Assembly (NCBI GenBank): GCA_030390025.1
Contig: CM059427.1
Location: 186,558,001-186,622,000 of the forward strand
Length of the DNA stretch: 64,000 bases
Source: Squalus acanthias
Taxonomy: Eukaryota
Direction of reading: 5' to 3'
Shown one piece after another: positions 2,090 through 27,490 of the stretch (positions are counted from its first letter, which is position 1; every line of letters begins with the position of its first letter). A program made the position numbers and the translations under genes. The notes beneath the pieces were generated by a model. The model saw nothing but the letters and a program-made list of their open reading frames with translations. It had not been told where the DNA came from and did not search any database.

Positions 2090-2434
2090 GAAGCCAGAAT
2101 TATATCTATTTTTTCCATCAGGAAGGGAACTTTGAATTGAAAGGCCCAGACAATCCTGGAAATGGCTCCATTGTCTGGGAATGGAGACCACACTCAGGGC
2201 AACAAACTACAAAGCAATTGGGAACTTTTCACAGAGAAGATCAGCGGTGGACCGTGCAATGGAGCGAGGAGTACAATAATATACCAGGCATTTCTCAGAG
2301 GATACGTGAGGACTGGGGGACCCTTAATCTGAGAATCAGAAACCCCACCTTTGAACTTGCGGGATTGTTCACCTGGAGTCAGACGCAGCCCAGTAAGAAA
2401 ATCCTGAAACAGTATGAAATATTTGGGCTCAAAG
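2090..2434 (+). CDS. Ig-receptor exon A: V-like Ig domain lacking both canonical cysteines (first exon of the gene visible in the window)
   Basis: ttcttgcag acceptor, AAAG|gtaagt donor, 345 bp, phase 1-1; GSQNYIYFF...IVWEW...LNLRIRNPTFELAGLFTWSQ...YEIFGLK shows V-set strand pattern (C-strand W, LxI, xxGxFxW in place of DxGxYxC). Confidence 0.88.
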
Positions 2435-2659
2435 GTAAGTAGCACAACAAATGGAAAGGATTCAATCATATGATTTTTTGTGAGTAATTCCACAAATATT
2501 CCTAACAGAATGTTGGGATCATGTCATGATCCTCCAGTTCTATTATCCAGCCCAGAATGAATCTCTCATTAAAAACAGCCATTTAGGTAAAAATTCTCTG
2601 TGCATTAGAACTAGTGGATGCACTCAGGGCTAGTAATTTTGATTGTTCACATTAGCACA

Positions 2660-3317
2660 AGAGGCCAGATTCAGAGGAACAGAGAGTTCTTTAGTGGCTT
2701 TAGGGCTGGAGGAGGTTGCAGAAATAGGGAGCGGGGTGGCCATGAGGATTTAAACAGGAAGATGAGAATTTTATATTGGATGTATTGGGGGACCAGGAGC
2801 CAATGTAGGTCGACAAGGACAGGAGTGATGGATGAGAGGGATTGGTGCACGATAGAATATGGGCAGATGATTTTTGGATGAGCTGAGTGATAGAGGATAG
2901 AAGGCCAGCCAGGGGAGTAGTCGCGTTTGGAGGTGTCAAATGTGTGGATGAGAGGTTAAGCAGCAGATGGGGTGAGGCAGGGGAATAGGGTGGGTGATGT
3001 TATGGAGGTGGAAGTAGGTGATCTTTGTGATGTAGAGGATGTGAGGTCAGAAACTTAACACAGTGCCAAAGAGTCTGGTCCATCCCCAGACAATAGCCAG
3101 GGAGAGGGATGGAGCTGGTGGCACTGGTATGAAGTTCGTGGTGAGGGTTGATACGATGCCTTTGGCGTTCCAAATATTTAACTGGAAAATTACGGCTCAT
3201 TGAAGACTAGATGTTAGACAAGCAATCTGACAGCACAGAGGCAATTGAAGGGTCGAGAGAGGTGGTGCAGTGGTAGAGCTCAGTGTCGTGAATATACATG
3301 TGGGAGCTGACCCAATG
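2660..3317 (-). mobile_element. Degenerate L2 LINE fragment
   Basis: Similar to L2 copies at 38560-39530 and 43633-44210. Confidence 0.6.
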
Positions 3318-3349
3318 TCTTTGGTGATCACTTACTAGAATGGTACCAG

Positions 3350-4752
3350 AAGCATAGAAGCATAGAAGATAGGAGCAGTAGTAGGTCATTCGGCCCCTCG
3401 AGCCTGCTCCGCCATTTAATGAGATCATGGCTGATCATCCAAATTCAGTACCCTGTCCCTGCTTTCTCCCCATATCCCTTGATCCCTTTAGCCTTAAGAA
3501 ATATATCTATCTCCTTCTTGAATATATTTAATGAATTGGCCTCAACTGCCTTCTGTGGTAGAGAATTCCACAGGTTCACCACTCTCTGGGTGAAGAAATT
3601 CCTCCTCATCTCAGTCCTAAATGGCTTACCCCTTATCCTTAGACTGTGACCTCTGGTTCTGGACTCCCCCGCCATCGGGAACATCCTTCCTGCATCTAGT
3701 CTGTCTAGTTCTGTTAGAATTTTATAAGTTTCAATGAGATCCCCTCTCATTCTTCGAAACTCTAGCGAATATAAGCCTAATAGACCCAATCTCTCTTCAT
3801 ACGTCATTCCTGCCATCCCAGGTTTCAGTCTGGTAAATCTTCGCTGCACTCCCTCCATGGCAAGAACATCCTTCCTCAGATAAGGCGACCAAAACTGTAC
3901 ACAATACTCAAGGTGTGGTCTCACCAAGGCCTTGTACAACTGCAGCAAGACATCCTTGCTCCTGTACTCGAATCCTCTCGCTATGAAGGCCAACATACCA
4001 TTTGCCTTCTTAACCGCCCGCTGCACCTGCAGGCTTACCTTCAGCGACTGGTGCACAAGGACTCCCAGATCACGTTGCACTTCCCCTTTTCCCAATCTAT
4101 TGTCGTTCAGATAATAAACTGTCTTCCTGTTTTTGCCACCAAAGTGGATAACCTTGCATTTATCCATATTATACTGCATCTGCCATGCATCTGCCCAATC
4201 ACCCAACCTGTCCAAATCATACTGGAGTTTCTCTGAATCCTCCTCACAGCACACACGCCCACCCAGCTTTGCGTCCTCTGCAAAATTAGAGATATTACAT
4301 CTAGTTCCCTCGTCTAGATCATTAATATATATTGTGAATAGCTGGGGTCCTAGCACCGATCCCTGTGGTACCCCACTAGTCACTGCCTGCCACTCGGAAA
4401 AAGACCCGTTTATTCCAACTCATTGCTTCCTGTCTGCCAACCAGTTCTCTATCCAAATCAGTACCTTACCCCCAATCCCATGTGCTTTAACTTTGCATGC
4501 TAATCTCTTATGCGGGACCTTATCGAAAGCCTTCTGAAAGTTCAAATACACCACATCCACTGTTTCTCCCTTATCTATTCTACCAGTTACATCCTCAAAA
4601 AATTCCAGTAGATTAGTCAGGCATGATTTCCCTTTTGTAAATACATGTTGACTTTGTCCAATCCTGTCACTGTTTTCCAAGTGCTGTGCTATTACATCTT
4701 TTATAATGGACTCTAGCATTTTGCCCACTACCGATGTCAGGCTTACCCACTA
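3350..4752 (-). mobile_element. 5'-truncated CR1 LINE (RT C-terminal part + 3' tail) with 32-bp flanking duplication
   Basis: ORFs 3445-4383 and 4420-4728 (GVPQGSVLGP, RPHLEYCVQFWSP), cttctatg tail; direct repeat 3318-3349 / 4753-4784. Confidence 0.93.
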
Positions 4753-5063
4753 TCTTTGGTGATCACTTACTAAAATGGTACCAGGGATGAGGGTCTTCAG
4801 TTAAGTGGAGAGACTGGAGAATCCGGGGTTGTCCTCCTTAGAGCAGAAAAGATTAAGAGGAGATTTGATGGAGGTGTTCAAAATAATGAATGAGCCAAGG
4901 GGGACAAGTGGACATTATCTGGGAAATGTTCATAGTCAGCACTAAGCACGGCTGGTCAGCATTTGTCTGATTGTGTCTGTTTGTAGGAAAAGAAAATTCT
5001 GAATGCAATAGTTCAGAAAGTTTATAGAAAGCTATACTTCACGTCATTTATCTGTTTTTACAG

Positions 5064-5336
5064 TTGAGACAGATTCCCAGAGGCCTATAATGGGCAGTGA
5101 CATCACCCTCAGTTGTACCGTCTCTAGACTCTCAGATACAGTCAGTCTTCACTGGAAATCAAGAGACTCATCTCAGCAGAACAGGAGGAACAACACTGAT
5201 GAGATCCATCTGAATAACACGGTCTATCTGATAGTCAGACACGTTGGAGCAGAAAATCAGAATTTGTACACATGGGAAGTGCAGGAAAATGACTCCATTG
5301 TTCTCACTGGAAACACAAATGTTGATGTGGATCAGA
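5064..5336 (+). CDS. Ig-receptor exon B: C2-like Ig domain (B-strand Cys present, F-strand Cys replaced by Trp)
   Basis: tttttacag acceptor, CAGA|gtaagt donor, 273 bp, phase 1-1; VETDSQRPIMGSDITLSCTVS...SLHW...NLYTWEV...VDVDQ. Confidence 0.9.
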
Positions 5337-5980
5337 GTAAGTCCAGAGCTAGCTTGCAGTAGGTGTTAAATAGTTACTGATATAAAACGGTTACACACAA
5401 AGTACAGCGAGCACAGGCACCACTGTGGGCTTTTACTGCAGAATGTGGTCCTTGTTTTTGCCCTGGAACATGGGTGTAAATATAAAATGGTGACATTAAG
5501 AGCTGATGTAAACAACCAGGTGAACTCAATGGATTCATTTCGATTCACATGTATGAATCAAAAAGAATAAAATCCCTCAATCTATAAAAAGCAACTGCCA
5601 TTCCAGTCTATATTGGAACAGAGAAATACAAACAAATTAAATGAACCCAACACAGGTGTTACAAGATTCAGGTCATTCCTGAGACATTCTCTTGGGTACA
5701 GTGGTGCTGCTCACTCACAAAACTGGTCTGAGTGTCTTACATTTAGTGATGTTCTCATACTGCCCAATATCTGACTATATGACAGCATAAGCTAAGGGTA
5801 TAAGAATAAGACCTCCTTGTGAACTGAACTGATAATTTGTGTCTATCGCACGTGTACTTCTTTAGTCTCTTTGAAAACGGTCCAATAAAAAGCCTTTGGT
5901 GAGACAAGGCCAATAATGAATTGTGAAACTGCTTTAGTTCACAGCGACTGAAGATAGAGAAAGTTATGTTCAGAGACACT

Positions 5981-6269
5981 GGGCTGGATTTTGTCTTGGG
6001 GTCGGGTTGGGGTCGTGTTACCTGCATTTCGTGTTGCCCCCCCCCCCCCCCCGACTCCAGATTAATGTGGATGAATGATGCAATTTTCACTTAATTGGGC
6101 AATTGAGTTCCAGCATGTGGGAACCCATGAACCAATTAGTGGTTTCAGACTGAAAGTCGCCTCTGATGATGTCATCATTGCAGGGACCATCATTGCAGAG
6201 ACTGCCTGGTCTCAGAGATTGCCTGGCATTTGCTGTGAGAGAACCTGGATGCAAAATGAGCAGCATCTC

Positions 6270-6300
<31 letters not shown>

Positions 6301-6772
6301 ATTTTTTTTGCAACCAAGTCCTCCCAGGCAGTCTCTGAAGACATTCAATGCAGCAGCATCAGAGGCGACTTTCAGACCTAATACTACTACTACCTTCATC
6401 ACAATACTACTACTGCCTTCATCACATCTCTGTTGTAATAGTGGACCTGCAGCTGATAGTCAGCTATCCAGTTGTGCTCCCGCCAGGTTTCACTGGCGTG
6501 TTTCACATCAGGCGTACTTCACATCGGAAAAGGGTTAAACTAGCTAAAACGTTGCAAAATGGCATTACAGAGCCAATTTAGGGCTTGTTAAGGGCTTTAA
6601 TGGCCTCTCCCGCCTCTTGGAGGCGGGACAGAGTCGGGAACCCGCGACCGATTTTGTCAAAATTGTGTGGAGGCGGGATGGAGTCGGGATGGGGTCGGGA
6701 CCCCCGAATCTGCAACTTTAACCCCCCACATGCCTCCAAACCCGACTCCACGGGTCATTGAAAATCCAGCCC
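5981..6772. mobile_element. PIF/Harbinger-type MITE
   Basis: TIR GGGCTGGATTTT / AAAATCCAGCCC; 3-bp TSD ACT on both sides. Confidence 0.88.
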
Positions 6773-7019
6773 ACTTAATTCAATCAGTATAAACTGTCTT
6801 TGTGTACAAGAACAAGATAACAAACATCTTGCACTTTCCCACACCAGTGGGTCAACTGTCTGAGTTAAATAAATTAACTCCAACTACCCTCCTACGTACT
6901 AAACTTCTGAGCCTGGCCCAAGCTTGCCCTTGCAGCTTTATGTATCAAGGCAGACTGACGTTGCACCCTTTGATGGACCTGCTGGATTGACTATATCTCT
7001 GTCTCTATTTTATCTCCTT

Positions 7020-7680
7020 CTGGGGCTTGAGCTGGGGCTGGGGCTGGGGCTTGAACTGGGTCTGGGGCTTGAACTGGGTCTGGGTCTGGGGCTGGGGCTG
7101 GGTCTGGGTCTGGGTCTGGGGCTGGGTCTGGGTCTGGGTCTGGGTCTGGGTCTGGGGCTGGGCTGGGTCTGGGTCTGGGGCTGGGTCTGGGTCTGGGTCT
7201 GGGTCTGGGGCTGGGCTGGGTCTGGGTCTGGGGCTGGGGCTGGGTCTGGGTCTGGGGCTGGGCTGGGTCTGGGTCTGGGGCAGGGGCCTGGGTCTGGGGC
7301 AGGGGCTGGGTCTGGGGCAGGNNNNNNNNNNNNNNNNNNNNNNNNNNNNNNNNNNNNNNNNNNNNNNNNNNNNNNNNNNNNNNNNNNNNNNNNNNNNNNN
7401 NNNNNNNNNNNNNNNNNNNNNNNNNNNNNNNNNNNNNNNNNNNNNNNNNNNNNNNNNNNNNNNNNNNNNNNNNNNNNNNNNNNNNNNNNNNNNNNNNNNT
7501 CTGGGGCTGGGGCTGGGTCTGGGTCTGGGGCTGGGCTGGGTCTGGGTCTGGGGCTGGGGCTGGGTCTGGGGCTGGGTCTGGGTCTGGGGCTGGGCTGGGT
7601 CTGGGTCTGGGTCTGGGTCTGGGGCTGGGCTGGGTCTGGGTCTGGGGCTGGGGCTGGGTCTGGGGCTGGGTCTGGGGCTG
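7020..7680. repeat. G-rich hexamer array (GGGTCT/GGGGCT)n containing an assembly gap (N run 7322-7499)
   Basis: Seen directly. Confidence 0.95.
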
Positions 7681-8126
7681 CAACGGGGGCAAAAAAAAAG
7701 AAAAAAATACGGCATGGGTCAATGGGCCGAATGGCCTCCTTCTGTGCTGTAACCATTCTATGATTCTGTTATCAACCCGAGGGAACCAAAGATGCCGAAC
7801 ACAATGGGTATGAGGCATTTATTGATAATCGATTGCTGAGACAGTTTAACAAATTGATTATCTATAGTCCATGGGGAAATAACATCACTTTGACGGGGGC
7901 CATGATTGGGGCAGATGGACTTTGTAGCACAACCCGGCGTTTAAACAATGGGCAGCCTGGGCCGGCAGCCAGTGTATCCGGGTCCCAGCCGATTTCCCTG
8001 TCCCAATGCTGCACTCCCAGCTGGCTTATGCCAGGAGAACGCTGAATGGCCCTGTGGGAATTCAGAACATCTGTATCTCAGCAGCTATATAAATCTAACA
8101 CCTTGTTTCCTGTCTCTCTATTTCAG

Positions 8127-8465
8127 ATTTACGCAATAAGAGTTACACACTTTATCGGTCAGGCACAGATCACAGTGAACTCTCCCTGATTTGTGAAGCT
8201 GAATCTGAGATCATTAAAACTAACTGGACTTGGAGGTCACGTCATTTTCAGAATCAAGAGAAAGAAATAGCTTCTACTTTCAGATCTAAGCCTATCGAAG
8301 TAAACAGGACCTACTTTGGGAGTCGACTGGTGCCCACAGTGGGAAATCTTAATGGCAAGAACTTCAGTGTGAGGATTGTCCCCGTACTGTTTGAAGATGC
8401 AGGAGTTTACACTTGTTCTCTGGGGTTATTGAATTATGTGACCATTAAACTAATCACAGTTAAAG
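8127..8465 (+). CDS. Ig-receptor exon C: canonical V-set Ig domain
   Basis: tatttcag acceptor, AAAG|gtagg donor, 339 bp, phase 1-1; LSLICEAE...NWTW...NFSVRIVPVLFEDAGVYTCSLG...KLITVK. Confidence 0.92.
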
Positions 8466-8506
8466 GTAGGAGACAGAATGCTGCAGGTGTTTTCAATGAT
8501 AAAGTC

Positions 8507-9883: not shown

Positions 9884-9920
9884 CTTGTTTAAAATCTAAA
9901 TGATTTTCTTCTTTACCTAG

Positions 9921-10190
9921 TCACAGCTGAACCATCTGATGCAGTGACTGAGGGAGACACCGTTACCCTGACCTGCTCTGTCTCTGATGTCACTGAATCA
10001 ATGAGACTTGTTTGGATCAGTAGTGATGGCAAAACTGTTGAAGAGAAAACTTTTAAGGACCAGAAGCAGGAAGAGGATTTGTTACGGCTGAGTATTCAGA
10101 AAGCTGATAGAGGCAGAAGGAACTGGACATGTGTTTTGTTTCATCAAAACATGCCCAGCGTTTTAATTCCATATTATCTGAAGGTTAACA
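9921..10190 (+). CDS. Ig-receptor exon D: C2-set Ig domain with F-strand WxC
   Basis: ctttacctag acceptor, AACA|gtaagt donor, 270 bp, phase 1-1; VTAEPSDAVTEGDTVTLTCSVS...RLVW...RNWTCVLF...YYLKVN. Confidence 0.92.
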
Positions 10191-10974
10191 GTAAGTGTCT
10201 CAGGTTTTGCTCTTTTAACCTCCATAGAAAGTTCTTGTCACTCACTGCTCTTTTATTATGATAACCTCTTACTTTTCAGATCCTATTGCACTCCACATTA
10301 CTCAGAGTTCAGTCATAGGTGTTCACATATAAACAATTTAACATCAAAAATCAAACTATACAATCAAAGCAATAGAGAGGAGCTAAAGTGGGATTTTTAT
10401 TTTAATATATCTTTGGGGTCCATTACACTCCTGTAAGGAGTCTTTTAAATGTTAAATCCCCTCCTGCCCACTGTAATAAGACTAGATGCCAGTAACAGAA
10501 TGGTTTTCCTTGCATCCAGTGTTGCTCCTCTTTTCATCAAACCTATTAAGTTAAAGGGCCGTCGAAATCAAATTAAAATTTACTGCAGGTTGACATCTTT
10601 TGTCAACCATTGACTTAAAGGACCTTCAAATTAAGAGAATCAAATTAAAATTTTGTCGGCCCGCGAGATGATGCACTCCAGTCCCCGCGACGCCCACCTG
10701 TCCCGGAAGGCCACGAGCTTGCGGACACTGCGTGCTCCATCTCCAGGGCCACCTGGCCGCGGAAGAGAGGCAGGCAATCGGCCCGGACGACCCCCTCGAC
10801 CGCCCGCTGCCTGGACCTATTAATGGCCACTTTGGCCAGGGCATCCAGTGTTGCTATGGTGGGTAATGATGGAAATTGTGACACATTATGTCACTCTGTC
10901 CCTGCTACTCATTTGGATATGAACCACACTTGACCAATGTCACTTCTGGATCAAAATCCTGGAAGTGGCGGTAA

Positions 10975-12168
10975 TTGGCCGGGGAATGATTGGCCAGGAA
11001 TGATTGGCCTTGGAATGATTGGCCAGGGAATGATTGGCCTTGGAATGATTGGCCAGGAATGATTGGCCTTGGAATGATTGGCCAGGAATGATTGGCCGGG
11101 AATGATTGGCCTTGGAATGATTGGCCAGGAATGATTGGCCGGGAATGATTGGCCTTGGAATGATTGGCCAGGAATGATTGGCCGGGAATGATTGGCCTTG
11201 GAATGATTGGCCGGGAATGATTCGCCGGGAATGATTGGCCTTGGAATGATTGGCCGGGAATGATTGGCCTTGGAATGATTGGCCTTGGAATGATTCGCCG
11301 GGAATGATTGGCCTTGGAATGATTGGCCAGGAATGATTGGCCTTGGAATGATTGGCCGGGAATGATTGGCCGGGAATGATTGGCCTTGGAATGATTGGCC
11401 AGGAATGATTGGCCGGGAATGATTGGCCTTGGAATGATTGGCCTTGGAATGATTCGCCGGGAATGATTGGCCTTGGAATGATTGGCCAGGGAATGATTGG
11501 CCTTGGAATGATTGGCCGGGAATGATTGGCCTTGGAATGATTGGCCAGGGAATGATTGGCCTTGGAATGATTGGCCGGGAATGATTGGCCTTGGAATGAT
11601 TGGCCGGGAATGATTGGCCTTGCAATGATTGGCCGGGAATGATTGGCCGGGGAATGATTGGCCTTGCAATGATTGGCCGGGAATGATTGGCCGGGAATGA
11701 TTGGCCTTGGAATGATTCGCCGGGAATGATTGGCCTTGGAATGATTGGCCGGGAATGATTGGCCGGGGAATGATTGGCCTTGCAATGATTGGCCGGGAAT
11801 GATTGGCCGGGGAATGATTGGCCAGGGAATGATTGGCCTTGGAATGATTGGCCTTTAAATGATTGGCCGGGGAATGATTGGCCTTTAAATGATTGGCCGG
11901 GGAATGATTGGCCTTGGAATGATTGGCCGGGGAATGATTGGTCGGGGAATGATTGGCCTTGGAATGATTGGCCTTGGAATGATTGGCCGGGGAATGATTG
12001 GTCGGGGAATGATTGGCCGGGGAATGATTGGTCGGGGAATGATTGGCTGGGGAATGATTGGCCTTGGAATGATTGGCCGGGGAATGATTGGTCGGGGAAT
12101 GATTGGCCGGGGAATGATTGGTCGGGGAATGATTGGTCGGGGAATGATTGGTCGGGGAATGATTGGCC
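10975..12168. repeat. Minisatellite of 14-15-bp units, core GGAATGATTGGCC, about 80 copies
   Basis: Seen directly; explains the repetitive ORFs at 10905-12446. Confidence 0.97.
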
Positions 12169-12733
12169 GTCTCGCTGACATATTGCCCCAAATCCATGCG
12201 AAATCGGATTGGGAAGGGAGCAGAAATAACTTGCTTGCTATTTACTCTTACAATGTTAACTTTATTGCTCTGGAGGCTACAGCTCCAGGTTTCTTGTTTT
12301 GGAGTAAATTTGCCTCTGAATTGCTCCCAGCAATAGACTGGGGAATCTGAGTGCACAGGACTCTGACACTCAGGGCTGGATTGTTCCAACCTCGGTGGGT
12401 CTGCGGCGTGTGGGGACCTCGCATCTGTCTCGATCCCGGCCTCCAACTAGATTTTACGTTGATTGGGCTTCTTAAGCCCGCCCTGCGATGTTCCCGGCCA
12501 ATTAATAGGAAGCAGGTCTGATGATGCCATTTGATGATGCATCATCAGCTGATTTCCTTAAAGGGGCCATGTCCAAAATGATTTTGACAATTCTGCTGTC
12601 AGTGTTCTACAGCATTGAGGTGCTGCAAACACTGCACAAAGGTGCACAGCTGCACCCAGGCTTTCCCATGACTCCCTCCATATGCTTATGCAGGGAGACA
12701 CAGCATGCAGGGAGGTTCTCTTCCCTTCCCATG

Positions 12734-14619: not shown

Positions 14620-14727
14620 GTGGTTACACTTTTAAACATATCATTGTCGTTATTTTCGGGAGTCTGGCTCTTCTCCTCTTCATTATCCTGGCAGTGGTGC
14701 TGTGTCTGAGAAAGTGCAAGGTTGCAG
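14620..14727 (+). CDS. Ig-receptor transmembrane exon
   Basis: ttctgacag acceptor, GCAG|gtaag donor, 108 bp, phase 1-1; SGYTFKH-IIVVIFGSLALLLFIILAVVLCL-RKCKVA: hydrophobic span with no charged residue, followed by basic stop-transfer. Confidence 0.9.
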
Positions 14728-14984
14728 GTAAGATATGTAGATTGCTAAAACCAATTTCAGGTTTCATACATGCAAACAAATGTGAATGTGGCACATGATT
14801 CCAAAAATTAAGAATGACAATTATATCCTTGTTTAAAATTAAACAATGTAATCCACTAGGATTGGATAATCAGATGTGTTTGTGTTTTTATGTGTCAAAT
14901 ATTCCAGGAAGGCATTAGGTCCTGAACTGCTAGAATGATGGGAGTTCGATACTGGGTTATGCAACTGGTCACAGATGAATAATA

Positions 14985-18184: not shown

Positions 18185-18477
18185 CTGGAGTGGGGCTTGA
18201 ACCCACAACCTTCAACAACAAGTGAATAAAAACAGAAAATGCTGGAAATACTCAGCAGGTCAGGCAGCATCAAGTGAATAAGTTGGCCTGCAATGTATCA
18301 CCAAGTCTATATCTAGGGTTAACAGAGATATCAATGATATCTTGTCACAATGTGTTTCATACTTAAAAAAGATATCTGTGCGAATGGTCCATTTTATTAC
18401 TGAGCTTGTTTATTAGAATGCCTGAAATTTATAAGGAAAGCTGAATGCATTTTAATCGGTGACCTCTGTATGAACAG

Positions 18478-18576
18478 GTTTGGGAAATCAAAGACAGAAA
18501 CCTCTGCAACCAGGAGAAAATATAGAAGATGCATCTCCGCTTTATTCAAATGCTAATGAAATGCAGCAAATCCAAG
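18478..18576 (+). CDS. Ig-receptor cytoplasmic exon 1 (PLYSN motif)
   Basis: tgaacag acceptor, CAAG|gtaata donor, 99 bp, phase 1-1, open: GLGNQRQKPLQPGENIEDASPLYSNANEMQQIQ. Confidence 0.75.
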
Positions 18577-19189
18577 GTAATATTTAAACACTAATAACAT
18601 AGTAGGAGTTTTACAAGTGCTCTGCTCCATTTGTTCATGGTTATTATGAATCCCCTTTGTAATTTTCAGTTACACTTAAAAGACACTCAAACACAGAAAT
18701 GTTGTGTTTTTATTCTGTCACATCCAAATATCCTTTAGAATGCAAGTGCATATTCTTATCCTTCATAAGCACTTCCCATTTTTAATAATATGTCATCATT
18801 GCAGACTCTTCTTATTAAGCTTAGATCCTCGGATACCGTGGGACATAGACTACTCAAAGTCACAATTATCAGCTCTTCCTAAACAACACCCAGGAGTAAG
18901 ATTACTGATGGTGAGACTGGTCGCAGTTACCCATCCAAAAACCTGTTGAAGCTCATTCATTGAAAGTATTTGGAACTCAAGACTGGGAATTAATCTGGAA
19001 CCTTCTACGTCTTGATGTAATTTCAACTATTTGTCATACTTCATATAAATTTGCAGGGTTACGGGCAAAGGGCGGGGGAGTGGGATTGGCTGAAGTGCTC
19101 TTGCAGAGAGCCGGCATGGGCTCGATGGGCCGAATGGCCTTCTTCCGTGCTGTAACCATTCTATGATTTTACGATTCTATATGCATGGC

Positions 19190-20385
19190 ATTTTACAACA
19201 ACAACTTGTATTTATATAGCGCGTTTAACGTAGTAAAACATCCCAAGGCACTTCACAAGAGTGTCATCAAACAAAATTTGACACTGAACAACATGAGGAG
19301 ATATAGGGCAGATGGTCAAAAGCTTGGTCAAAGATTAGGCTTTAAGGAGCGTCTTGAAGGAGGAACAAGAGGTAGAGAGGCATAGAGGTTTAGGGAGGGA
19401 ATTCCAGAGCTTAGGGCGTTCGCAGCTGAAGGCAAGGCTGCCAATGGTGGAGCAATTAAAATCGGGGACATAAGAGCATAAGAACTTTAGAAATAGGAGC
19501 AGGAGTCGGCCATTCGGCCCCTCGAACCTGCTCTGCCATTCAATAAGATCATGGCTGATCTTCTACCTCATCTCCACTTTCCTGCACTATCCCCATATCC
19601 CTTGATTCCATAATATCCAAAAATCTAGCGATCTCTGTCTTGAATATACTCAACGACTGAGCATCTACAGCCCTCTGGGGTAGAGAATTCCAAAGATTCA
19701 CCACCCTCTGAGTGAAGAAATTTCTCCTCATCTCAGTCCTGAATGGACTACCCCTTATTTTGAGACTGTGACCCCTGGTTCTAGACTCCCCAGCCAGGGG
19801 AAACATCTACCCTGTCAAGCCCTGTAAGAATTTTGTATGTTTCAATGAGATCACTCCTCATTCTTCTAAACTCTGGAGAATACAGGCCTAGTCTCCTCAA
19901 TCTGTCCTCATAGGACAATCCCCCCATCCCAGGAACCAGTCTGGTGAACCTTTGTTGCACTCCCTCTATGGCAATTAGATCCTTCTTTAGGTAAGGAGAC
20001 CAAAACTGTACACAATACTCCAGGTGTGATCTCATCAGGGCCCTATATAATTGCAATAAGATGTCTTTACTCTTATACCCAAATCCTCTTGTAACAAAGG
20101 CCAATATACCATTTGCTTTCCTAATTGTTTGCTGTATCCGCATGTTAACTTTCAGTGATTCGTAAACAAGGACGCCAGGTCCCTCTGACCACTAACATTT
20201 CCGAATCCCTCACTGTTTAAAAAATGCTCTGCTTTTTCAAGAGTCCAGCATTGGAGGAGCGCAGATATCTCAGAGGGTTGTAGGGCTGGAGGAGATTACA
20301 GAGAAAGGGAGCAGCAAGGCCATGGAGGGATTTGAAAACAAGGATGAGAATTTAAAAATCATTACTTAACCAGGAGCCAATTTAA
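19190..20385 (-). mobile_element. L2 3' end with a nested CR1 3' fragment (~19470-20237)
   Basis: CR1 RT C-terminal ORFs 19549-19806 and 19781-20143; L2 sequence resumes after 20237. Confidence 0.85.
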
Positions 20386-20490
20386 CCAATTTTAACACAG
20401 TCCAATCGTCATTTGGAGACTTTCAAACAATTAACATTAATAAAAGACACCACACAACAATAGTCTGTGCTCCTTTAAATCTCACTTATC

Positions 20491-21256
20491 GGGCCAGAAA
20501 TTCGGGTCGGAGGCTTCCCGCGGGTGCAAGCCCCCGACCTGCACTTACCTAGCACGCCTGCCGTTGTGCTCTGGGCCCGCGTGGAATTCCGATCCTGGGC
20601 CTCCTCCAGCTGCCGGCGCGCAGTGCTTGCGTATCCCAGGGGCGCAGTTAGTTCGAAGCATCCCCAGGGATCACGTGGGCCATGGAGAGCCAATCAGATC
20701 AGGGAATCTCCATTCATAGATTTGACAGGAAGACCTGTCAAATCTATGAATAGAGATCGGCCCCAAAACCTCACTAATACTTCAAATACATTTTTTTTTT
20801 TAAATCACATTTTTAAAATAACTATAAATTACACAAAATAACTATTTTAAACAATAATTTAAATTTTTGAAAAAATTAATTACAGTTTTTAACGGGGCTA
20901 AAAATAAACTTACCTTTCTTTAAAGTATTTAAAAATAATAAACCTGTGGAAAAAATGTTTTAATTTTACTTAATTCACCACTTACCTTGTTAAAAGCAGG
21001 CCTTGTGCCTGCTTTTTCCCCGCGCAGCTGCTGGGGACTTACCCTCACACAGAAACCTGAAAAAAAAACCGGAAGTTCGATGCATGCGCGCTGCCTCTCC
21101 GGCGCACGCGTTTGACCTCCGAACCCCTTCTTTCAAGGGAACGGAAGTTCCGGTTTCCAGCGCATGCGCAGTACATGCGCGAAACCGGCACTTTCATTTG
21201 GTCTACGAGTGAGTACACAGCGCGTACTCACCCGTGGAGACCCGAATTTCTGGCCC
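20491..21256. mobile_element. MITE with 18-bp perfect TIR
   Basis: GGGCCAGAAATTCGGGTC / GACCCGAATTTCTGGCCC; internally related to 33958-34722 and 53308-54056. Confidence 0.88.
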
Positions 21257-21632
21257 TAGTGTGTTATAGTTTGCTGTGTGTCCCAATTCACAGTGGGATT
21301 AATTGTTTCATTTTGAGTCCTTAACACTTTCCCTCTAAAAGAGAGCTCACACATTTCCTCAGATATCACCCTACAACCATTAGATTCCTCCAACACACGT
21401 CACAAATACTCTAGTGTTTCTAAAACCACTTGAGACAACTAGTGCCAAAGATTCAGAACTTCATGAATATCTTTTTTAGACATTAATGTTTCCTCTGAAG
21501 GACTGATCCCACTTTCCTGATCATTCGAATATATCTCATTAGCAATGGAGCAGTTTTTGTATAAATGCCTGATACAGCTTTTTGAAAATCAGACCATGCT
21601 AATGCGTTAATCAGAAAAATATTTTTTCCCAG

Positions 21633-21710
21633 GAGATAACGAGACACCGGTGCCTGAGACAAGTAGATTTGCTGAATATGCAACTGTCAGTAGAAAGGCA
21701 AAAGAAGACA
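21633..21710 (+). CDS. Ig-receptor cytoplasmic exon 2 (ITSM-like AEYATV)
   Basis: ttttttcccag acceptor, GACA|gtaagt donor, 78 bp, phase 1-1: GDNETPVPETSRFAEYATVSRKAKED. Confidence 0.82.
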
Positions 21711-22691
21711 GTAAGTAGATGAATCATATTATGTGGCTCTATCAGTGGAAGTATTGTTAACATAGAAACTGTCAGATTTCATTGAGTTAAAACATTGGTT
21801 CTAGTTTAAAACTTTGGCTCGGAAGCTCTTCAGAGAGGCAATGATAAATTCTGAGATATTTTAACAACCCTTAGTAAAATAGATCTTTGTGTTTCTGGTC
21901 CTCTATAAAAGGCTTCAAGCACAATACAGCTGCCTATTTATTCAGTCATTTTAGTCATTGTGTAGAACACAAGTTTGCAAATAGAATGGCTGTTTAGAAA
22001 TAATATGAATCACTAAAATAAAGTAAACAGTTAGCAACAAGTGCAGTTGTCAGGATCACATTTGGCTTTGAGACTCCAGATGATCATATTGCTTCCCAAC
22101 ACTTCATATCCAGACTCACAGATGAAGAATCAATATTTGAGTTATTTACTGGAGGACTGGAACCAGAACCTAGTGAGAGTCAGGAGAAGTGGGAGTAAAG
22201 AGAATAAAGAGTAATGTTGGAAAAAATATAATGATTAGCGAGCTATGTTTTTAATTTACATTGTTTAGTAAATCTGCAGCAACAGATGCTTATTCTCCAA
22301 CTTATGAGTCAACTTGGCAGCACTGTCACTTCGGAGACAGAAATTTATGGGTTCAAGCCCCATTACAGACTTTGAGCATGTACTCTAGACTGACACTTCA
22401 GTGGGAAGACTGCACTTTTGAAAGTGTTGTTTTATCAGTTGAGAACTGTTTCGGTGAATGTTAAAGATACCATCATATCATTTGAAGGAGAGCAGGAAGT
22501 TGTGCTGACAAAGATTCTTCTCTCAACCAACAGCACCACAAGAGATTAACTGGTTGTTATCTCATTTCCTGCTTTTGGGACCTTGAATGGTGTTTGTTTA
22601 CCGAACAACAGGACTTACACTTTAAAAGATATAAATATATATATAGATACATATAGATGCAAACTCTTTATTTCCATCTTATTCTCTGCAG

Positions 22692-22748
22692 ACACAGAAA
22701 GAGAAGATATTCATTACGGATCTATCGTTTTTCAGAAAGAAGCACCAG
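22692..22748 (+). CDS. Ig-receptor cytoplasmic exon 3 (ITIM IHYGSI)
   Basis: attctctgcag acceptor, CCAG|gtagtg donor, 57 bp, phase 1-1: NTEREDIHYGSIVFQKEAP. Confidence 0.82.
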
Positions 22749-23986
22749 GTAGTGAAAACTAACATTTTTCATTTTTTTTCATTTTTGTGTTAATCCAGGT
22801 GAGGAATGTTAGGGCTGGGTAATAAAACTCATTATATTTAGGCCCCTCATGTCAGCATCAGGCACTCCTCGGGTAAAGCTCCTCATACTCTGCCCCGTCA
22901 AAGTGTCCCGTCGCCAATCTCAGAAGGGCACCAGTGGGCCATTTTTCCATTTGCCACACACAGACATCTTGTGCCCTCTCTGAGTGAAATGGCCAATAAT
23001 GTTGAATTAGAGAAAGAATTGTGCTGCAGGTCTGTTCATAGTAGGAACTGCTCTGAGACTGTAGAACTAGAAATAAGAAATATTAACGTACCTCAACAGT
23101 AAGACACAGTATTGTGGTGACTACGGGACTGGACTAAAAACCGGAAATTCAGGAGTTCCAATCATACCATGGTATGCAGTGAATTTGAATCAAATATATC
23201 TCACAATTTATAGGCCAGCACCAGGGAAATGATAATTGGGTTTACTAATGTCCTTCAGGGAAACGCATCTGCCTTGTGGCTTAAATGGGTCTCTAATCCA
23301 CACTATGTAGTTAACGCTTTCTGCTCCCCGAAGCATATAATTGCTTCAGGAAGAATGTCCACTGCCTTCTTAGGGCAACTAGGGATGGGCAATAAATGTG
23401 ACTCTGAGAATAAACATATAAAATATTGTAGGATGGCGAAGGGCCCTTAAGACCAGTGCATTCTCCTGCACAGACAATAAAGCACGGTAACTGTTGGCGA
23501 TATTGTATACTTTATTAATAGAATCGGTGTAGTCTTTCCAATTGGAACTTTTTCTAGAAAAAAGTTGACGTGATAGACAACCTCTATTATTGTAACTAAT
23601 TTTGAACTAAATGTTGAAGTTATTAGCAATATGGAACCATAGTAAGAGGAAAACATCTGACATTTTGGAATCATATCACACCAAATATTGCACAGGTGGC
23701 GTAGAACTTGATTCAGCCTTCTGAGGGCCGGCTTTACTTAGGGGGTCACCCTCTCACCTCTGAGAAAGAAGGTCATGGGTTCACACCTTGCTTGCTGCAA
23801 TCTACACAGAGGGACTGTTGCATTGTTGGAGGTGCGATGTCTAGAACAGTGACTAAACTATAAAAGTGTTTATTTTGCTTTGGGATGCCTTGAAGATGTG
23901 AAAGACACTGTGAAAATTCTTCCCAAGTTGATATAAGTAAAGCTGATATTCCTATCAGTGGCGAGGAAACAATTATTCCCTGGGTC

Positions 23987-26793
23987 AAGAGCCAAGAGCG
24001 AGAGTCCCGAAGGCTGTGTTGCCTGCCCGGTGCCAGGGTTAAGGACATCTCCTCTGGGCTGGAGAGAAACTTGGAGTGGGAGGGGGAGGATCCAGTTGTC
24101 GTGGTCCATGTTGGTACCAATGACATAGATAGGACAAGGAAAGAGGTTCTGCTGAGGGAGTTTGAGCAGCTAGGGGCCAAATTAAAAAGCAGAACCTCGA
24201 GGGTAATAATCTCTGGATTACTACCTGAGCCACGAGCAAATTTGGCTAGGGTAAATAAAATCAGGGAGTTGAATGCGTGGCTCAAAGACTGGTGTGGGAA
24301 AAATGGGTTTTGCTTCTTGGGACACTGGCACCAGTACTGGGGCAGGAGAGAGCTGTTCCGTTGGGACGGACTTCACTTGGCCAGTGCTGGGACTAGTGTC
24401 CTGGCGAATCGAATAACTAGGGCTGTGGAGAGGGCTTTAAACTAATTAGTGGGGGGGAGGTTTCAAGAGAGCAAAAAATAAAAATGACAACAGAGAGGGT
24501 CATAGACATAGGTAGCATGATCAGTGGTGTACATTCAAGGAGTTATTTTACAACTTCCAAAAAAAATATATTCCACTGAAAAGAAAAGGGTGTAAAAGAA
24601 AGGACAGTCATCCGTGGCTAAGTAAAGAAATTAAGGATAGTATTCGACTAAAAACAAGGGCATATAAGGTAGCGAAATCTAGTGGGAGGACAGAGGATTG
24701 GGAAAACTTTAAAAGGCAGCAAAAAATAACAAAAAGATTGATTAAGAAAGGGAAGATAGATTATGAAAGTAAATTAGCAAAAAATATAAAAACAGATAGT
24801 AAGAGTTTTTATAGTTATATAAAAAGAAAAAGGGTGGCTAAAGTAAATGTTGGTCCCTTAGAGGATGAGACCGGGAAATTAATGGTGGGAAATATGGAGA
24901 TGGCAAAAACACTGAATGAATATTTTGTATCAGTCTTTACAGTAGAGGACACTAAGAATATCCCAACACTGGACAAACAGGGGGCTATAGGGGGAGAGGA
25001 GCTAAACACGATCAAAATCACGAAGGAAGTGGTACTCGGTAAAATAATGGGACTCAAGGCGGATAAATCACCTGGACCTGATGGCTTACATCCTAGAGTC
25101 TTGAAGGAAGTGGCGGTAGGGATTGTAGATGCATTGGTAATAATTTTTCAAAACTCCCTGGATTCCGCTAAGGTCCCGGCAGACTGGAAAACTGCTAATG
25201 TAACACCCTTATTTAAAAAGGGCAGTAGACAGAAGGCTGGTAACTATAGACCGGTTAGCCTAAAATCTGTGGTAGGTAAAATTTTGGAGTCCATTATTAA
25301 GGAAACAGTAACAGGACATTTGGATAATCATAATTTAATAGGACAAAGTCAGCATGGTTTTATGAAGGGGAAGTCATGTTTGACAAATTTGCTGGAGTTC
25401 TTTGAGGAAGTAACATATAGAGTGGATAAAGGGGAACCAGTGGACGTAGTGTATTTAGACTTCCAAAAGGCATTTGACAAGGTGCCACACAAAAGATTAT
25501 TGCTTAAGGTAAAAAATCACGGGATTGGGGGTAATATTCTGGCATGGATAGAGGATTGGCTATCTAACAGAAAGCAAAGAGTTGGGATAAATGGTTCATT
25601 CTCAGACTGGCAATCAGTAACTAGTGGTGTTCCACAGGGGTCAGTGCTGGGTCCCCAACTCTTCACAATCTATATTAACGATTTGGAGGAAGGGACCAAG
25701 TGTAACATATCAAAATTTGCAGATGATACAAAGATGGGAGGGAAAGTAGTGAGTGAGGAGGACATAAAAAACCTGCAAGGGGACATAGACAGGCTAAGTA
25801 AGTGGGCAGAGATTTGGCAGATGGAATACAACACTGGAAAGTGTGAGGTGATGCACTTTGGCAGGAAAAATCCTAGAGCAATTTATTATCTTAATGGCAA
25901 GAAACTGGAGAGTACTGAAGTGCAAAGGGATCTGGGGGTCCTGGTGCACGAAACTCAAAAGGTTAGTATGCAGGTGCAGCAAGTGATTAAGAAGGCAAAT
26001 GGAATGTTGGCTTTCATTGCTAGGGGGATAGAATATAAAAATAGGGAGGTATTGCTTCAGTTGTACAAGGTATTGGTGAGACCGCACCTGGAATACTGCA
26101 TACAGTTTTGGTGTCCTTACTTAAGGAAAGACATCCTTGCTCTCGAGGCAGTGCAAAAAAGGTTCACTCGGTTAATCCCGGGGATGAGGGGGTGGTCATA
26201 TGAGGAGAGGTTGGGTAGATTGGGACTCTACTCATTGGAGTTCAGAAGAATGAGAGGCGATCTTATTGAAACATATAAGATTGTGAAGGGGTTGGATCGG
26301 GTGGATGCGGGGAGGATGTTCCCGATGACGGGTGAGACGAGAACTAGGGGACATAGTCTTAGAATAAGGGGCTGCTCTTTCAAAACTGAGATGAGGAGGA
26401 ACTACTTCACTCAGAGGGTGGTAGGTCCATGGAATATGCTGCCACAAAAAGCTGTAGAAGCTACAACATTAATTAAATTTAAAACAGAAATAGACAGTTT
26501 CCTAGAAGTAAAGGGCATTAAGGGTTACGGGGAGCGGGCAGGAATTTGGACATGAGTCTAGGTTCGGATCGGTCATGGCCCTGTGGGTAGTGGAGCGGGC
26601 CCAGGGACTGTGTAGCCTGATTCTGCTCCTATTTCGTGTGTGCAATTCTGTTAGATGCAGGAGATGGTTCTGTGATAGATAGTAGATTGGCGGTTAGGAT
26701 CAGATCAGCCATGATCTTATTGAATGGCGGAGCAGGCTCGAGGGGCCGATTGGCCTACTCCTGCTCCTATTTCTTATGTTCTTATGTTCCTTA
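23987..26793 (+). mobile_element. Young CR1 LINE: ORF1 esterase remnant, endonuclease deleted, uninterrupted RT ORF (24738-26555)
   Basis: SGNH-like VVVHVGTND...DGLHL (24071-24445); 605-aa RT ORF with FADD; ttcttatg tail; TSD TGGGTC (23981-86 / 26794-99); empty site seen at ~44260. Confidence 0.93.
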
Positions 26794-27236
26794 TGGGTCT
26801 TAATGCTAGGAAAAGGGGTGGTGATCTGTGACACGGGTCCTCCATTCCTTTTATGTTGTCCCCATGCTTCAATGGAATTAAGACTGAAGGAGCAGTTCCA
26901 CTTCCTTCAGCCTCACTTTCCTGTGGTTTCATCCGAAGAGCTCCCACTTCCAACAGCACCTGAATGAGCTAGCAGTGGGTCATGCAATCGCCCAACACTC
27001 ATGGAAGTAGCTTAGTTCATTTAGGACCATCCCAATGGCTCACTGTGTAAATGCTTAGAGTGGATCTGAATCATACAGAGGCCAACTGGGTTCACGGTCA
27101 ATCAATGTCTTGCTGATCCATTGGCTGTACCAGTGAAATGCAGTAAATTGCGGACACTTATATGCCAATTGTCAGTTTTTTGTCAGTCCAGTTCCTCAAT
27201 GTTATTTTTTAATTGTGATGTTTGCAATTATCACAG

Positions 27237-27280
27237 GGACCAGACATGGTACACAGTGCAATAAGCAATCTTCAGAAACT
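27237..27280 (+). CDS. Ig-receptor cytoplasmic exon 4
   Basis: attatcacag acceptor, ACT|gtaagt donor, 44 bp, phase 1-0: GTRHGTQCNKQSSET; phases link exon 3 to the terminal exon. Confidence 0.78.
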
Positions 27281-27418
27281 GTAAGTATATCAATTGCTAT
27301 TGGTGAAATCACACAACCTACAATATTAATATCTAACAAATTTGTAAGGTTGTTATCTGAGGTAAAGAGATGCAATAATAGATCACATTATTATAAATGC
27401 TTAATTTCTCTCTTGCAG

Positions 27419-27490
27419 AACCTGGCTCCTTCAAAGGAAGATGATTCATCTGTCATCTATGCACAAATAGCACAAGCAAAATATAAATAA
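27419..27490 (+). CDS. Ig-receptor terminal coding exon (ITIM-like VIYAQI, stop TAA)
   Basis: tttctctcttgcag acceptor, phase 0: NLAPSKEDDSSVIYAQIAQAKYK*. Confidence 0.85.
   Translation, partial: NLAPSKEDDSSVIYAQIAQAKYK

What the first reader, a model, noticed from the sequence alone, without database searches (positions are those of the whole stretch)
2090..27490. CD4/LAG-3-like V-C2-V-C2 ectodomain joined to a four-tyrosine ITIM/ITSM tail: candidate undescribed shark inhibitory receptor
Seen: ten exons with GT-AG sites and compatible phases splice into one stop-free frame (Ig-Ig-Ig-Ig-TM-tail). Known: alternating V/C2 domains and an F-strand WxC in the C2 domain (here RNWTCVLF) are CD4/LAG-3 family traits. 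The tail, however, has neither the CD4 CxC Lck clasp nor the LAG-3 acidic EP repeats. It instead carries PLYSN, AEYATV, IHYGSI and VIYAQI, resembling PD-1/Siglec/CD22 tails, and the TM has no charged residue. Inference: an inhibitory receptor built on a CD4-like scaffold, probably one member of a tandem family.
Basis: partly seen in the sequence, partly recalled or inferred. Interest (0 to 1): 0.88.

Follow-up and report, generated by a model that had tools for sequence, protein, structure and literature searches.

The report
Shark inhibitory receptor, CD4-like build
This is the expressed 3' part of a shark immune-receptor gene with CD4/LAG-3-like outer domains and an inhibitory tail, one member of a large, unnamed fish gene family that public databases list only as uncharacterized proteins.

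Summary
The ten + strand exons are real. All have AG/GT borders and compatible phases. Contigs with an RNA-like exon/intron depth pattern join the last four exons exactly as predicted. The N gap lies inside one microsatellite in intron 2 and hides no exon.

The gene belongs to a large family, 145 stored proteins almost all named "uncharacterized". It occurs in sharks, rays, chimaera, sturgeon, paddlefish, bichir and eel.

The window's four Ig exons match the second V-C2-V-C2 unit of eight-Ig relatives. The gene therefore probably starts upstream of the window.

The CD4/LAG-3 likeness holds best at the fold level. Rat CD4 D3D4 ranks first of 48,161 chains (Z 12.8) for a relative's model. By sequence the link is weak, and the CD4 and LAG-3 tail motifs are absent.

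The tail has two canonical ITIMs, one ITIM-like motif and a YxN site. Relatives with a Lys-bearing membrane span and short tails make this a paired inhibitory/activating family.

I found no paper describing it. First readers of this scan noted similar eight-Ig genes elsewhere on this genome piece.

The parts
2090..2434 (+). Ig exon, cysteine-free V-like domain (Trp at the F-strand Cys place, GLFTW). Phase 1-1. Corresponds to domain 5 of eight-Ig relatives.
   Evidence: AG/GT borders. 88.6% identical to P0052 residues 443-556. 34 library hits with this exon alone. No Pfam hit at E up to 1.
5064..5336 (+). Ig exon, C2-type domain with B-strand Cys but YTW instead of YxC (domain 6).
   Evidence: 94.4% identical to P0052 558-647. 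The YTW[ED]V motif occurs in 10 of 10 eight-Ig proteins checked and in the partial P0076, and in 0 of 6 shorter ones.
7322..7499 (.). Assembly gap inside a (CTGGGK)n microsatellite in intron 2. Not filled and not looked up.
   Evidence: The flanking exons are adjacent in relatives.
8127..8465 (+). Ig exon, V-set domain with the canonical Cys pair (domain 7).
   Evidence: Weak Pfam V-set/Ig_3 hits (E 4.5e-4, below the cut-offs). 77.7-84.8% identical to relatives.
9921..10190 (+). Ig exon, C2 domain with an F-strand WxC (RNWTCVLF) (domain 8).
   Evidence: Pfam ig E 6.6e-8. 88.5% identical to P0060 681-767.
14620..14727 (+). Stalk and membrane-span exon. No charged residue in the span. Juxtamembrane CLRKCK.
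18478..18576 (+). Tail exon 1 with PLYSNANE, a YxN site of the Grb2-binding type.
   Evidence: 90.6% identical to P0052 888-919. The motif is conserved across the family.
21633..21710 (+). Tail exon 2 with AEYATV. ITIM-like; relatives have S at position -2.
   Evidence: The joint to the next exon appears in 4 of 4 runs.
22692..22748 (+). Tail exon 3 with IHYGSI, a canonical ITIM.
   Evidence: The joint to 27237 appears in 2 of 4 runs.
27237..27280 (+). Tail exon 4, 44 bases, phase 1 to 0. It sets the frame of the last exon.
   Evidence: The joint 27280 to 27419 appears in 4 of 4 runs.
27419..27490 (+). Last coding exon with VIYAQI (canonical ITIM) and the TAA stop. The 3' UTR runs on.
   Evidence: Similarity to the downstream duplicate continues to about 27966.
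24531..26789 (.). LINE-type retroelement insertion in the intron between tail exons 3 and 4. Not part of the gene product.
   Evidence: Repeat matches and reverse-transcriptase-like frames. Very deep repeat contigs.
42826..45913 (+). Partial duplicate of the intron 3' part, tail exons 4-5 and the 3' UTR. Both exons are open with splice sites kept.
   Evidence: 79-88% identity. (95% over the two exons).

Best explanation
The region holds the 3' ten exons of an expressed gene for a type I membrane receptor of the immunoglobulin superfamily. It is the inhibitory-type member of a large, fast-diversifying multigene family of paired receptors. The family is found in cartilaginous fishes and basal ray-finned fishes.

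The ectodomain is built from V-C2 modules whose predicted fold is closest to CD4 D3D4/D1D2 and to LAG-3. The window's four Ig exons are most probably domains 5-8 of an eight-Ig protein, (V-C2-V-C2)x2. Its leader and first four Ig exons would then lie upstream of the window.

Inferred mechanism, not shown here. Ligand binding by the outer domains brings the tail near Src-family kinases. The phosphorylated ITIMs (IHYGSI, VIYAQI), and perhaps AEYATV, then recruit SHP-1/SHP-2-type phosphatases, and the membrane-near YxN (LYSN) recruits a Grb2-type adaptor. This would damp signals from ITAM-coupled receptors. Those include sister receptors of the same family that have a Lys in the membrane span and short tails. 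The ligand is unknown.
For: Gene structure: AG/GT at all borders and a closed frame.

Transcripts: the joint of tail exons 2-3 appears in 4 of 4 runs and that of exons 4-5 in 4 of 4 runs. The joint of exons 3-4 (22748 to 27237, GT..AG) appears in 2 of 4 runs. Exon bins are at depth 91-963, while non-repeat intron bins read 0-43 apart from one at 27-103.

Family: the D5 exon alone finds 34 proteins at E up to 0.001 among 1.84 billion. P0028 finds 103 proteins at E up to 1e-10.

Colinearity with P0052 (1002 aa): D5 443-556, D6 558-647, D7 649-760, tail 888-1002.

Second-unit identity: the window's exons are 66-70% identical to Mobula P0004 residues 437-842 against 45-62% to residues 31-434. YTW[ED]V occurs only in second units.

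Fold (model of relative P0076): Foldseek rank 1 of 350,542 chains is LAG-3 8dgg_A (E 3.6e-9), with CD4 1wio at rank 5. The search independent of Foldseek, over 48,161 chains, gives rank 1 rat CD4 D3D4 (Z 12.8, rmsd 3.0, 168 of 177 residues) and rank 2 CD4 D1D2 (Z 10.2). The best non-CD4 row is Z 9.9, and LAG-3 scores 9.7 and 9.6.

Profile A1 against the PDB: LAG-3 E 8.7e-12, with two stretches in which WxC is aligned.

Tail classes among 145 family proteins: 62 ITIM tails, 23 Lys-in-span short tails, 0 with both.
Against: The upstream exons were not seen, because the window starts 2 kb before the first exon. The eight-Ig reading rests on relatives and on unchecked scan notes.

Shorter relatives exist (355-590 aa), so a shorter product is possible.

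With the larger profile A2, LAG-3 (5e-9) and CD4 (7e-9) rank only 4-6, behind NCAM, pIgR and PD-L1.

No Pfam CD4-specific family was listed for the exons, for 6 relatives, or among the top 25 of 38 families for 13 more.

The structure is of a relative (75-91% identical to three of the window's exons), not of the window's protein. It has mean pLDDT 67 and a poor D6.

The runs are labelled 'RNA?' by guess, their organisms are coded, and reads were accepted from 90% likeness. Some contigs may therefore come from paralogues or a close species. They carry other letters at 21661, 27481 and 27489 and, by my reading of the shifted joint, at 21710.

No binding or signalling was tested.
Confidence: 0.7

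Rival explanations
1. The gene is complete as a four-Ig V-C2-V-C2 receptor. A short leader exon would lie just upstream, in or before the first 2 kb of the window.
For: Four-Ig and shorter family members with the same tail exist, for example P0094 (554 aa), P0016 (455 aa) and P0099 (355 aa). A leader exon of 15-20 residues is easily missed by tblastn.
Against: No leader-like match lies upstream of 2071 with 14 family proteins as queries. The D5-type V exon (YIYFFHQEGNF...GLFTW) and the YTWEV C2 exon occur in relatives only as the second unit, after 'YYLEPSG'. The split first codon reads G-S-Q-N-Y-I-Y-F-F only if the upstream exon gives a G (assumed; that exon was not seen), like the internal G-S-R-N-Y-I-Y-F-F of P0052. 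Unchecked scan notes report Ig exons 14 and 24 kb upstream.
Confidence: 0.2
2. The CD4/LAG-3 likeness is only generic Ig architecture or convergence. The family would then be nearer to another group, such as teleost G6f-like/G6F, CEACAM, or CD22/Siglec-type receptors.
For: Profile A2 ranks NCAM, pIgR and PD-L1 above LAG-3 and CD4. CEA is the top hit of profile A1, by the sum of weak stretches. Language-model features put a 'g6f-like' cluster (0.96, 202 of 256 shared) level with CD4 (0.96, 201). G6f-like has four Ig domains and a tail YxN (PMC3528668, passages). Sources name single isoforms CEACAM5-like, VCAM1-like and obscurin-like. The first V domain lacks cysteines, as do CEACAM and CD2/SLAM N domains (recalled, not from a call).
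Against: Per-stretch E-values to LAG-3 (1e-4 to 8e-4, across the V/C2 junction, WxC aligned) are better than those to CEA (0.02-0.2). The two-domain superposition on CD4 D3D4 stands 2.9 Z above the best non-CD4 row. No ITAM is present, which G6f-like has. The domain order V-C2-V-C2 differs from V-(C2)n of Siglecs and CEACAMs (recalled, not from a call). No G6f-like sequence could be obtained for a direct test.
Confidence: 0.3
3. The locus is a decaying or silent copy (pseudogene), and the transcripts seen come from paralogues.
For: Two Ig domains have lost the canonical disulfide. The contigs differ from the assembly at a few places (21661, 27481, 27489; 21710 by my reading of the joint). The region is riddled with retroelements.
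Against: All ten exons are open with intact splice sites. The disulfide losses are conserved in 10 of 10 eight-Ig relatives from sharks and rays, so they are ancestral features. No differences are listed inside exon 27237-27280, where the downstream duplicate differs. The joint from 22748, an exon that has no second copy in the window, is seen in 2 runs.
Confidence: 0.05

Closest known systems
CD4 / LAG-3 family
   Same: Alternating V-C2-V-C2 domains, one exon per domain. A long continuous strand runs from the V domain into the C2 domain in the model (residues 368-383). WxC sits in the F strand of the last C2 domain. The best structural matches are CD4 D3D4, CD4 D1D2 and LAG-3. LAG-3 is the best per-stretch sequence match in the PDB.
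   Different: The four-domain unit is doubled to eight in most long relatives. The first V of each unit lacks the Cys pair. The other C2 domain has YxC or YTW instead of WxC. There is no Cx(C/H) Lck motif and no (F/Y)xxL(D/E) motif. The tail is spread over five exons, against one in shark LAG-3. There are many paralogues, against single CD4 and LAG-3 genes. The Pfam CD4 families are not matched. Identity to CD4/LAG-3 is only 12-23% in structural alignments.
Teleost G6f-like (collagen receptor of thrombocytes) and mammalian G6F
   Same: Four Ig-like domains, one membrane span, and a YxN Grb2-type site as the first tail tyrosine (PMC3528668 passages). A 'g6f-like' cluster is among the nearest by language-model features.
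   Different: G6f-like signals through an ITAM. This gene has ITIMs and no ITAM. No sequence comparison could be made here. From memory only, not seen in any call: the original G6F-like description (Ohashi et al. 2010) reported similarity to CD4/LAG-3.
Paired inhibitory/activating IgSF multigene families (KIR, LILR, SIRP, CD300, fish NITR, LITR, DICP, skate MDIR; names recalled)
   Same: Family members with similar ectodomains carry one of two endings. One is a long ITIM tail on an uncharged span. The other is a short tail on a span with a basic residue (62 and 23 of 145, none with both). There are many paralogues per genome. Long contigs shared by many paralogues of one species suggest clusters.
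   Different: Different domain types and order. None of those families, as far as I recall, uses a CD4-like V-C2 rod or an eight-domain doubled unit.
Tails of CD22/Siglecs, CEACAM1, PD-1 (recalled motifs)
   Same: Short tyrosine motifs of the (I/V)xYxx(I/L/V) kind, each on its own small exon, together with a YxN site as in CD22.
   Different: These are short linear motifs that arise repeatedly. The ectodomains are unrelated in order and type. No call tested these proteins directly beyond their weak PDB hits.

Membership tests
CD4/LAG-3 family | V-C2-V-C2 ectodomain, taken to derive from duplication of a V-C2 pair | tested here: met
   The exon order V, C2, V, C2 is in the window. The unit is doubled in relatives.
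CD4/LAG-3 family | WxC motif in strand F of both C2 domains (D2 and D4), as stated in PMC10768021 (passages) | tested here: not met
   Only the last C2 has it (NWTC at 10118). The other C2 reads YTW here and YxC in relatives.
CD4/LAG-3 family | Fold of the V-C2 module like CD4 D1D2/D3D4 | tested here: met
   For the relative P0076: 1cid_A Z 12.8, rmsd 3.0, 168 of 177 residues, rank 1 of 48,161. LAG-3 is Foldseek rank 1. The window's own joined protein was not modelled.
CD4/LAG-3 family | Significant, specific sequence similarity (Pfam C2-set PF05790 or CD4-extracellular PF09191, or best hits to CD4/LAG-3) | tested here: inconclusive
   No Pfam CD4 family was listed. LAG-3 ranks 2-4 with profile A1 but 4-5 with profile A2, behind NCAM, pIgR and PD-L1.
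CD4 proper | Cytoplasmic Cx(C/H) motif for LCK | tested here: not met
   The tail translations contain no CxC or CxH. The motif definition comes from PMC10768021.
LAG-3 proper | Single-exon tail with (F/Y)xxL(D/E) | tested here: not met
   The tail lies on five exons, and LYSNANE does not fit the motif.
CD4/LAG-3 family | Location in the conserved CD4/LAG-3 genomic neighbourhood | not testable with these tools
The chromosome is given only in a figure of PMC10768021.
ITIM-bearing inhibitory receptors (functional class) | Type I receptor with an uncharged membrane span and at least one (I/V/L/S)xYxx(I/V/L) in the tail | tested here: met
   IHYGSI and VIYAQI, with no charged residue inside the span. 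The consensus is recalled.
ITIM-bearing inhibitory receptors (functional class) | Phosphotyrosine-dependent recruitment of SHP-1/SHP-2/SHIP and an inhibitory outcome | not testable with these tools
   This needs biochemistry.
Paired receptor family | Close relatives with an activating-type span (basic residue) and a short tail | tested here: met
   23 of 145 stored family proteins have the SGYL(F/L)VKL-type span, including two sturgeon proteins. None of these has an ITIM tail. None lies in this window.
G6f-like / G6F | Tail with YxN followed by an ITAM split over two exons (PMC3528668) | tested here: not met
   The YxN is present (LYSN). No YxxL/I pair at ITAM spacing is present.
G6f-like / G6F | Sequence similarity of the Ig domains | not tested
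   No G6f-like sequence was returned by any search. There is only a language-model lead.

The most novel reading that the evidence does not exclude
This family is a third, polygenic branch of the CD4/LAG-3 (and perhaps G6F) lineage. It predates the split of cartilaginous and bony fishes and was lost in tetrapods and most teleosts. It would serve as a paired inhibitory/activating sensor system for MHC or MHC-like ligands. That would make it the cartilaginous-fish counterpart of KIR/LILR, built on a doubled CD4 scaffold.
Probability: 0.12. Interest if true: 0.85.

Novelty: new variant of a known kind. Interest (0 to 1): 0.6.

Why it matters
Sharks are the oldest living animals with MHC-based adaptive immunity, yet their germline inhibitory and activating receptor families are poorly charted. 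This gene comes from a large, expressed family of paired receptors whose modules fold like CD4/LAG-3. The family is shared with sturgeon, bichir and eel, and none of my six searches found a paper on it. If confirmed, it would add a new branch to the CD4/LAG-3 story. It would also offer candidate MHC-binding or other self-sensing receptors in cartilaginous fish. Finally, it gives annotators a name and a domain plan for more than a hundred 'uncharacterized' database entries.

Tried and rejected
Leader exon: tblastn with 14 family proteins found nothing upstream of 2071.

Ninth exon: my automatic scan for a phase 1 to 0 exon missed the true 44-base exon because of a pyrimidine-tract filter. I found it from relatives' tails and the sequence.

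Single-exon PDB searches. D5 gave no meaningful hit. D6, D7 and D8 gave only generic Ig hits, with no CD4 or LAG-3.

Single-sequence structure of the D5 exon: the model was poor (pLDDT 51.8) and I did not use it.

Protein searches meant to reach CD4, LAG-3 or G6f-like sequences for a profile-profile test both failed. The sturgeon member found only 9 family proteins. The 13-sequence profile A3 scored only 4 proteins. So no hhalign or tree against CD4, LAG-3 or G6f-like could be made.

Atlas search with the D5 exon gave only weak generic V-set leads.

CEACAM idea: papers claim CEA homologues in cartilaginous fish. The passages I saw rest on one skate EST and name no accession, so I could not link them to this family.

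Literature. Six searches found no paper describing the family. The Venkatesh 2014 main text does not mention 'obscurin', and its supplements were not opened. Supplements of PMC10768021 were not opened either and may bear on whether such genes were seen.

Siglec/CD22 and SLAM kinship were considered from recalled features only and not pursued beyond the structure lists.


Full report
OBSERVATION. The window (64,000 bases, one N run at 7322-7499) carries ten exons on the + strand: 2090-2434, 5064-5336, 8127-8465, 9921-10190, 14620-14727, 18478-18576, 21633-21710, 22692-22748, 27237-27280 and 27419-27490. 10 of 10 are preceded by AG and 9 of 9 internal ends are followed by GT. The first eight are phase 1-1. 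The ninth (44 bases) shifts phase 1 to 0. The last ends in TAA at 27488-27490. The lengths sum to 1685, which with one base owed by an upstream exon makes 562 codons. A direct splice of the eighth exon to the last one would hit a stop after eight codons. The small ninth exon is therefore essential. My first scan missed it, and I located it from relatives' tails and the sequence.

THE GAP. The N run sits in the intron between the second and third exons. It lies within one hexamer microsatellite that continues on both sides, (CTGGGT)n at 7032-7316 and (CTGGGG)n at 7501-7680. The exons on either side match residues 558-647 and 649-760 of the public protein P0052, with only the split codon between them. 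No coding exon is therefore expected in the gap. I did not fill it or look its letters up.

TRANSCRIPTS. I laid four runs on 21600-27599.
- The joint of tail exons 2 and 3 appears in 4 of 4 runs. It is placed one letter to the left of the predicted border. I read this as the same junction in transcripts that carry G instead of A at 21710. That changes Asn to Asp, the residue relatives have. This is an inference.
- The joint 22748 to 27237 (GT..AG after the tool's 'cut +3') appears in 2 of 4 runs (X3, X6) and is absent from X1 and X2.
- The joint 27280 to 27419 (GT..AG) appears in 4 of 4 runs.
- Exon-bearing bins have depth 91-963. Of the intron bins outside the repeats, one reads 27-103 and the rest 0-43.

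Caveats: the tool labels the runs 'RNA?' by guess, the organisms are coded, and likeness was set to 90. Some contigs may therefore come from paralogues or a close species, and they differ from the assembly at 21661, 27481 and 27489. The links from the Ig exons to the membrane-span exon and on to the tail were not covered by reads. They rest on colinear public gene models.

WHAT IT BELONGS TO. The cysteine-free V exon alone, searched against 1.84 billion representatives, found 34 proteins at E up to 0.001 and 6 at E up to 1e-30. A relative from Scyliorhinus torazame (P0028) found 103 proteins at E up to 1e-10.

Source names are almost all 'uncharacterized protein' or 'hypothetical protein'. Single entries are called obscurin-like, VCAM1-like or CEACAM5-like. 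The species are:
- twelve sharks;
- nine rays and skates;
- the chimaera Callorhinchus;
- among bony fishes, sturgeons, paddlefish, bichir and an eel.

The closest proteins are from Pristiophorus japonicus and Heptranchias perlo. By exon the identities are D5 88-89%, D6 94%, D7 78-85%, D8 87-89% and tail exons 71-95%. The window therefore comes from a related shark that is not itself matched exactly.

FOUR OR EIGHT DOMAINS. Most long relatives (843-1033 aa) have eight Ig domains, (V-C2-V-C2)x2, then the membrane span and the same tail.

The window's exons match the second unit:
- Against Mobula P0004 they are 66, 70, 65 and 63% identical to residues 437-842, compared with 45, 55, 46 and 62% to residues 31-434.
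- In P0052 the match starts at residue 443.
- The C2 exon with YTWEV is diagnostic. The motif occurs once, in the second unit, in 10 of 10 eight-Ig proteins checked. It also occurs in P0076, which starts inside domain 4. It occurs in 0 of 6 shorter proteins.
- No leader-like match lies upstream of 2071.

First-stage notes of this scan place Ig exons 14 and 24 kb before the window and describe eight-Ig genes of the same kind further along the same piece. These notes are unchecked leads. I therefore read the window as the 3' half of an eight-Ig gene, at about 0.7. A four-Ig product with its own leader remains possible.

IS IT CD4/LAG-3-LIKE? By sequence the answer is mixed.
- Pfam gives only generic Ig families. 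No CD4-specific family is listed for the exons, for six relatives, or among the 25 families shown of 38 for 13 more.
- A nine-sequence family profile against PDB sequences puts LAG-3 at ranks 2-4 (E 8.7e-12). Two stretches run from the end of a V domain through a C2 domain and align the family's WxC with LAG-3's WGC and WQC. CD4 scores 2e-7.
- A 75-sequence profile ranks NCAM, pIgR and PD-L1 above LAG-3 (5e-9) and CD4 (7e-9).

By fold the answer is clearer. I modelled the relative P0076 (end of D4, D5-D8 and the span) with the family alignment. Mean pLDDT is 67; D8 is good, D7 fair and D6 poor.
- Foldseek over 350,542 chains ranks LAG-3 first and CD4 fifth.
- The second-look aligner puts CD4 in nine of the top ten rows.
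- The search independent of Foldseek, over 48,161 chains, ranks rat CD4 D3D4 first (Z 12.8, rmsd 3.0, 168 of 177 residues). CD4 D1D2 is second (Z 10.2), the best non-CD4 row is Z 9.9, and LAG-3 scores 9.7 and 9.6.
- The model shows one long strand running from D7 into D8 (residues 368-383), the rod-like junction known from CD4.
- Language-model features list CD4 and 'g6f-like' clusters at equal score.

The gene is not CD4 or LAG-3 proper. Shark CD4 has a CxH tail. Shark LAG-3 has a single-exon tail with (F/Y)xxL(D/E), and both sit as single genes in a conserved region (PMC10768021, section 3.2 and passages). WxC is present in only one of the two C2 types here.

TAIL AND LIKELY MECHANISM. The consensus definitions used here are recalled.
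- The tail holds five tyrosines.
- IHYGSI and VIYAQI fit the ITIM consensus.
- AEYATV fits except at position -2, where many relatives have S.
- PLYSN is a YxN site of the Grb2-binding kind. It is kept as the first tail tyrosine across sharks and rays and in sturgeon and bichir relatives.
- The membrane span is uncharged.
- Among 145 stored family proteins, 62 have ITIM tails. Another 23 have a span with a lysine (SGYLFVKL type) and a short tail, none has both, and 60 are fragments or other forms. Sturgeon has both kinds.

This is the pattern of paired inhibitory and activating receptors. I infer that this gene's product recruits SHP-type phosphatases, and a Grb2-type adaptor, after tyrosine phosphorylation, and that it counteracts ITAM-coupled partners. 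None of this was tested, and the ligand is unknown.

LITERATURE. Six searches found no paper describing this family. PMC10768021 (outline passages and section 3.2 read) treats only CD4 and LAG-3. PMC3528668 (passages) describes G6f-like as a four-Ig receptor with YxN and ITAM. The Venkatesh 2014 main text has no 'obscurin'. CEACAM papers claim cartilaginous-fish homologues on thin grounds in the passages I saw. Supplements were closed and may hold more.

VERDICT. The gene is an inhibitory receptor on a CD4/LAG-3-like scaffold, but probably eight-domain rather than four. It is not shark-specific, and it is already present in databases as unnamed models. It is a new variant of a known kind, the paired IgSF receptor families. 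It is of solid interest to comparative immunology. The CD4/LAG-3 kinship and the function still need proof.

Noticed in passing
window 42826-45913: Partial duplicate of the last intron's 3' part, tail exons 4-5 and the 3' UTR. Identity is 79-88% overall and 95% over the two exons. Splice sites and frames are kept, and the stop is TGA instead of TAA. The RNA-like contigs carry G at 27489, as this copy does, but show no listed differences inside exon 27237-27280, where the copies differ.
   Followed up: partly
window 24531-26789 and 3348-4749, 19491-20236, 60012-61657: Several copies of a LINE-type retroelement with reverse-transcriptase frames. The copy inside the tail intron is covered by very deep contigs (word depth up to about 175,000 at 26600-26799), so the element family appears highly transcribed. 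Low-depth contigs skip 23980-26794 as an 'empty site' form.
   Followed up: partly
protein P0079 (nurse shark entry named obscurin-like) against window 18479-18550: Its last 24 residues match tail exon 1 read in a shifted frame (75% identity, E 2e-9). That entry therefore either records an alternative splice form with a truncated, motif-free tail or holds a frameshift.
   Followed up: partly
protein P0001 (Scyliorhinus canicula, 1710 aa) against window 24882-24998, 35083-35169, 42545-42628: Its first 39 residues match retroelement sequence, and it strings four V-C2-V-C2 units together. This public model is probably a fusion of neighbouring paralogues with a transposon-derived start.
   Followed up: no
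window 10908-12446, minus strand: A 513-codon open frame made of NHSPT/NHSPA repeats. It is a long tandem repeat in the intron after the fourth Ig exon, not a gene.
   Followed up: no
window 2090-5336: Two consecutive Ig domains lack the B-F disulfide and have Trp at the F-strand Cys place (GLFTW, YTWEV). The second keeps an unpaired B-strand Cys. The feature is conserved in sharks and rays. The model of this domain pair is poor.
   Followed up: partly
window exon 8127-8465 against the other Ig exons: The second V domain (D7) is the most divergent Ig exon against the closest relatives (75-85%, compared with 87-94% for D5, D6 and D8). This hints at diversifying selection on a ligand-facing domain. 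It was not tested.
   Followed up: no
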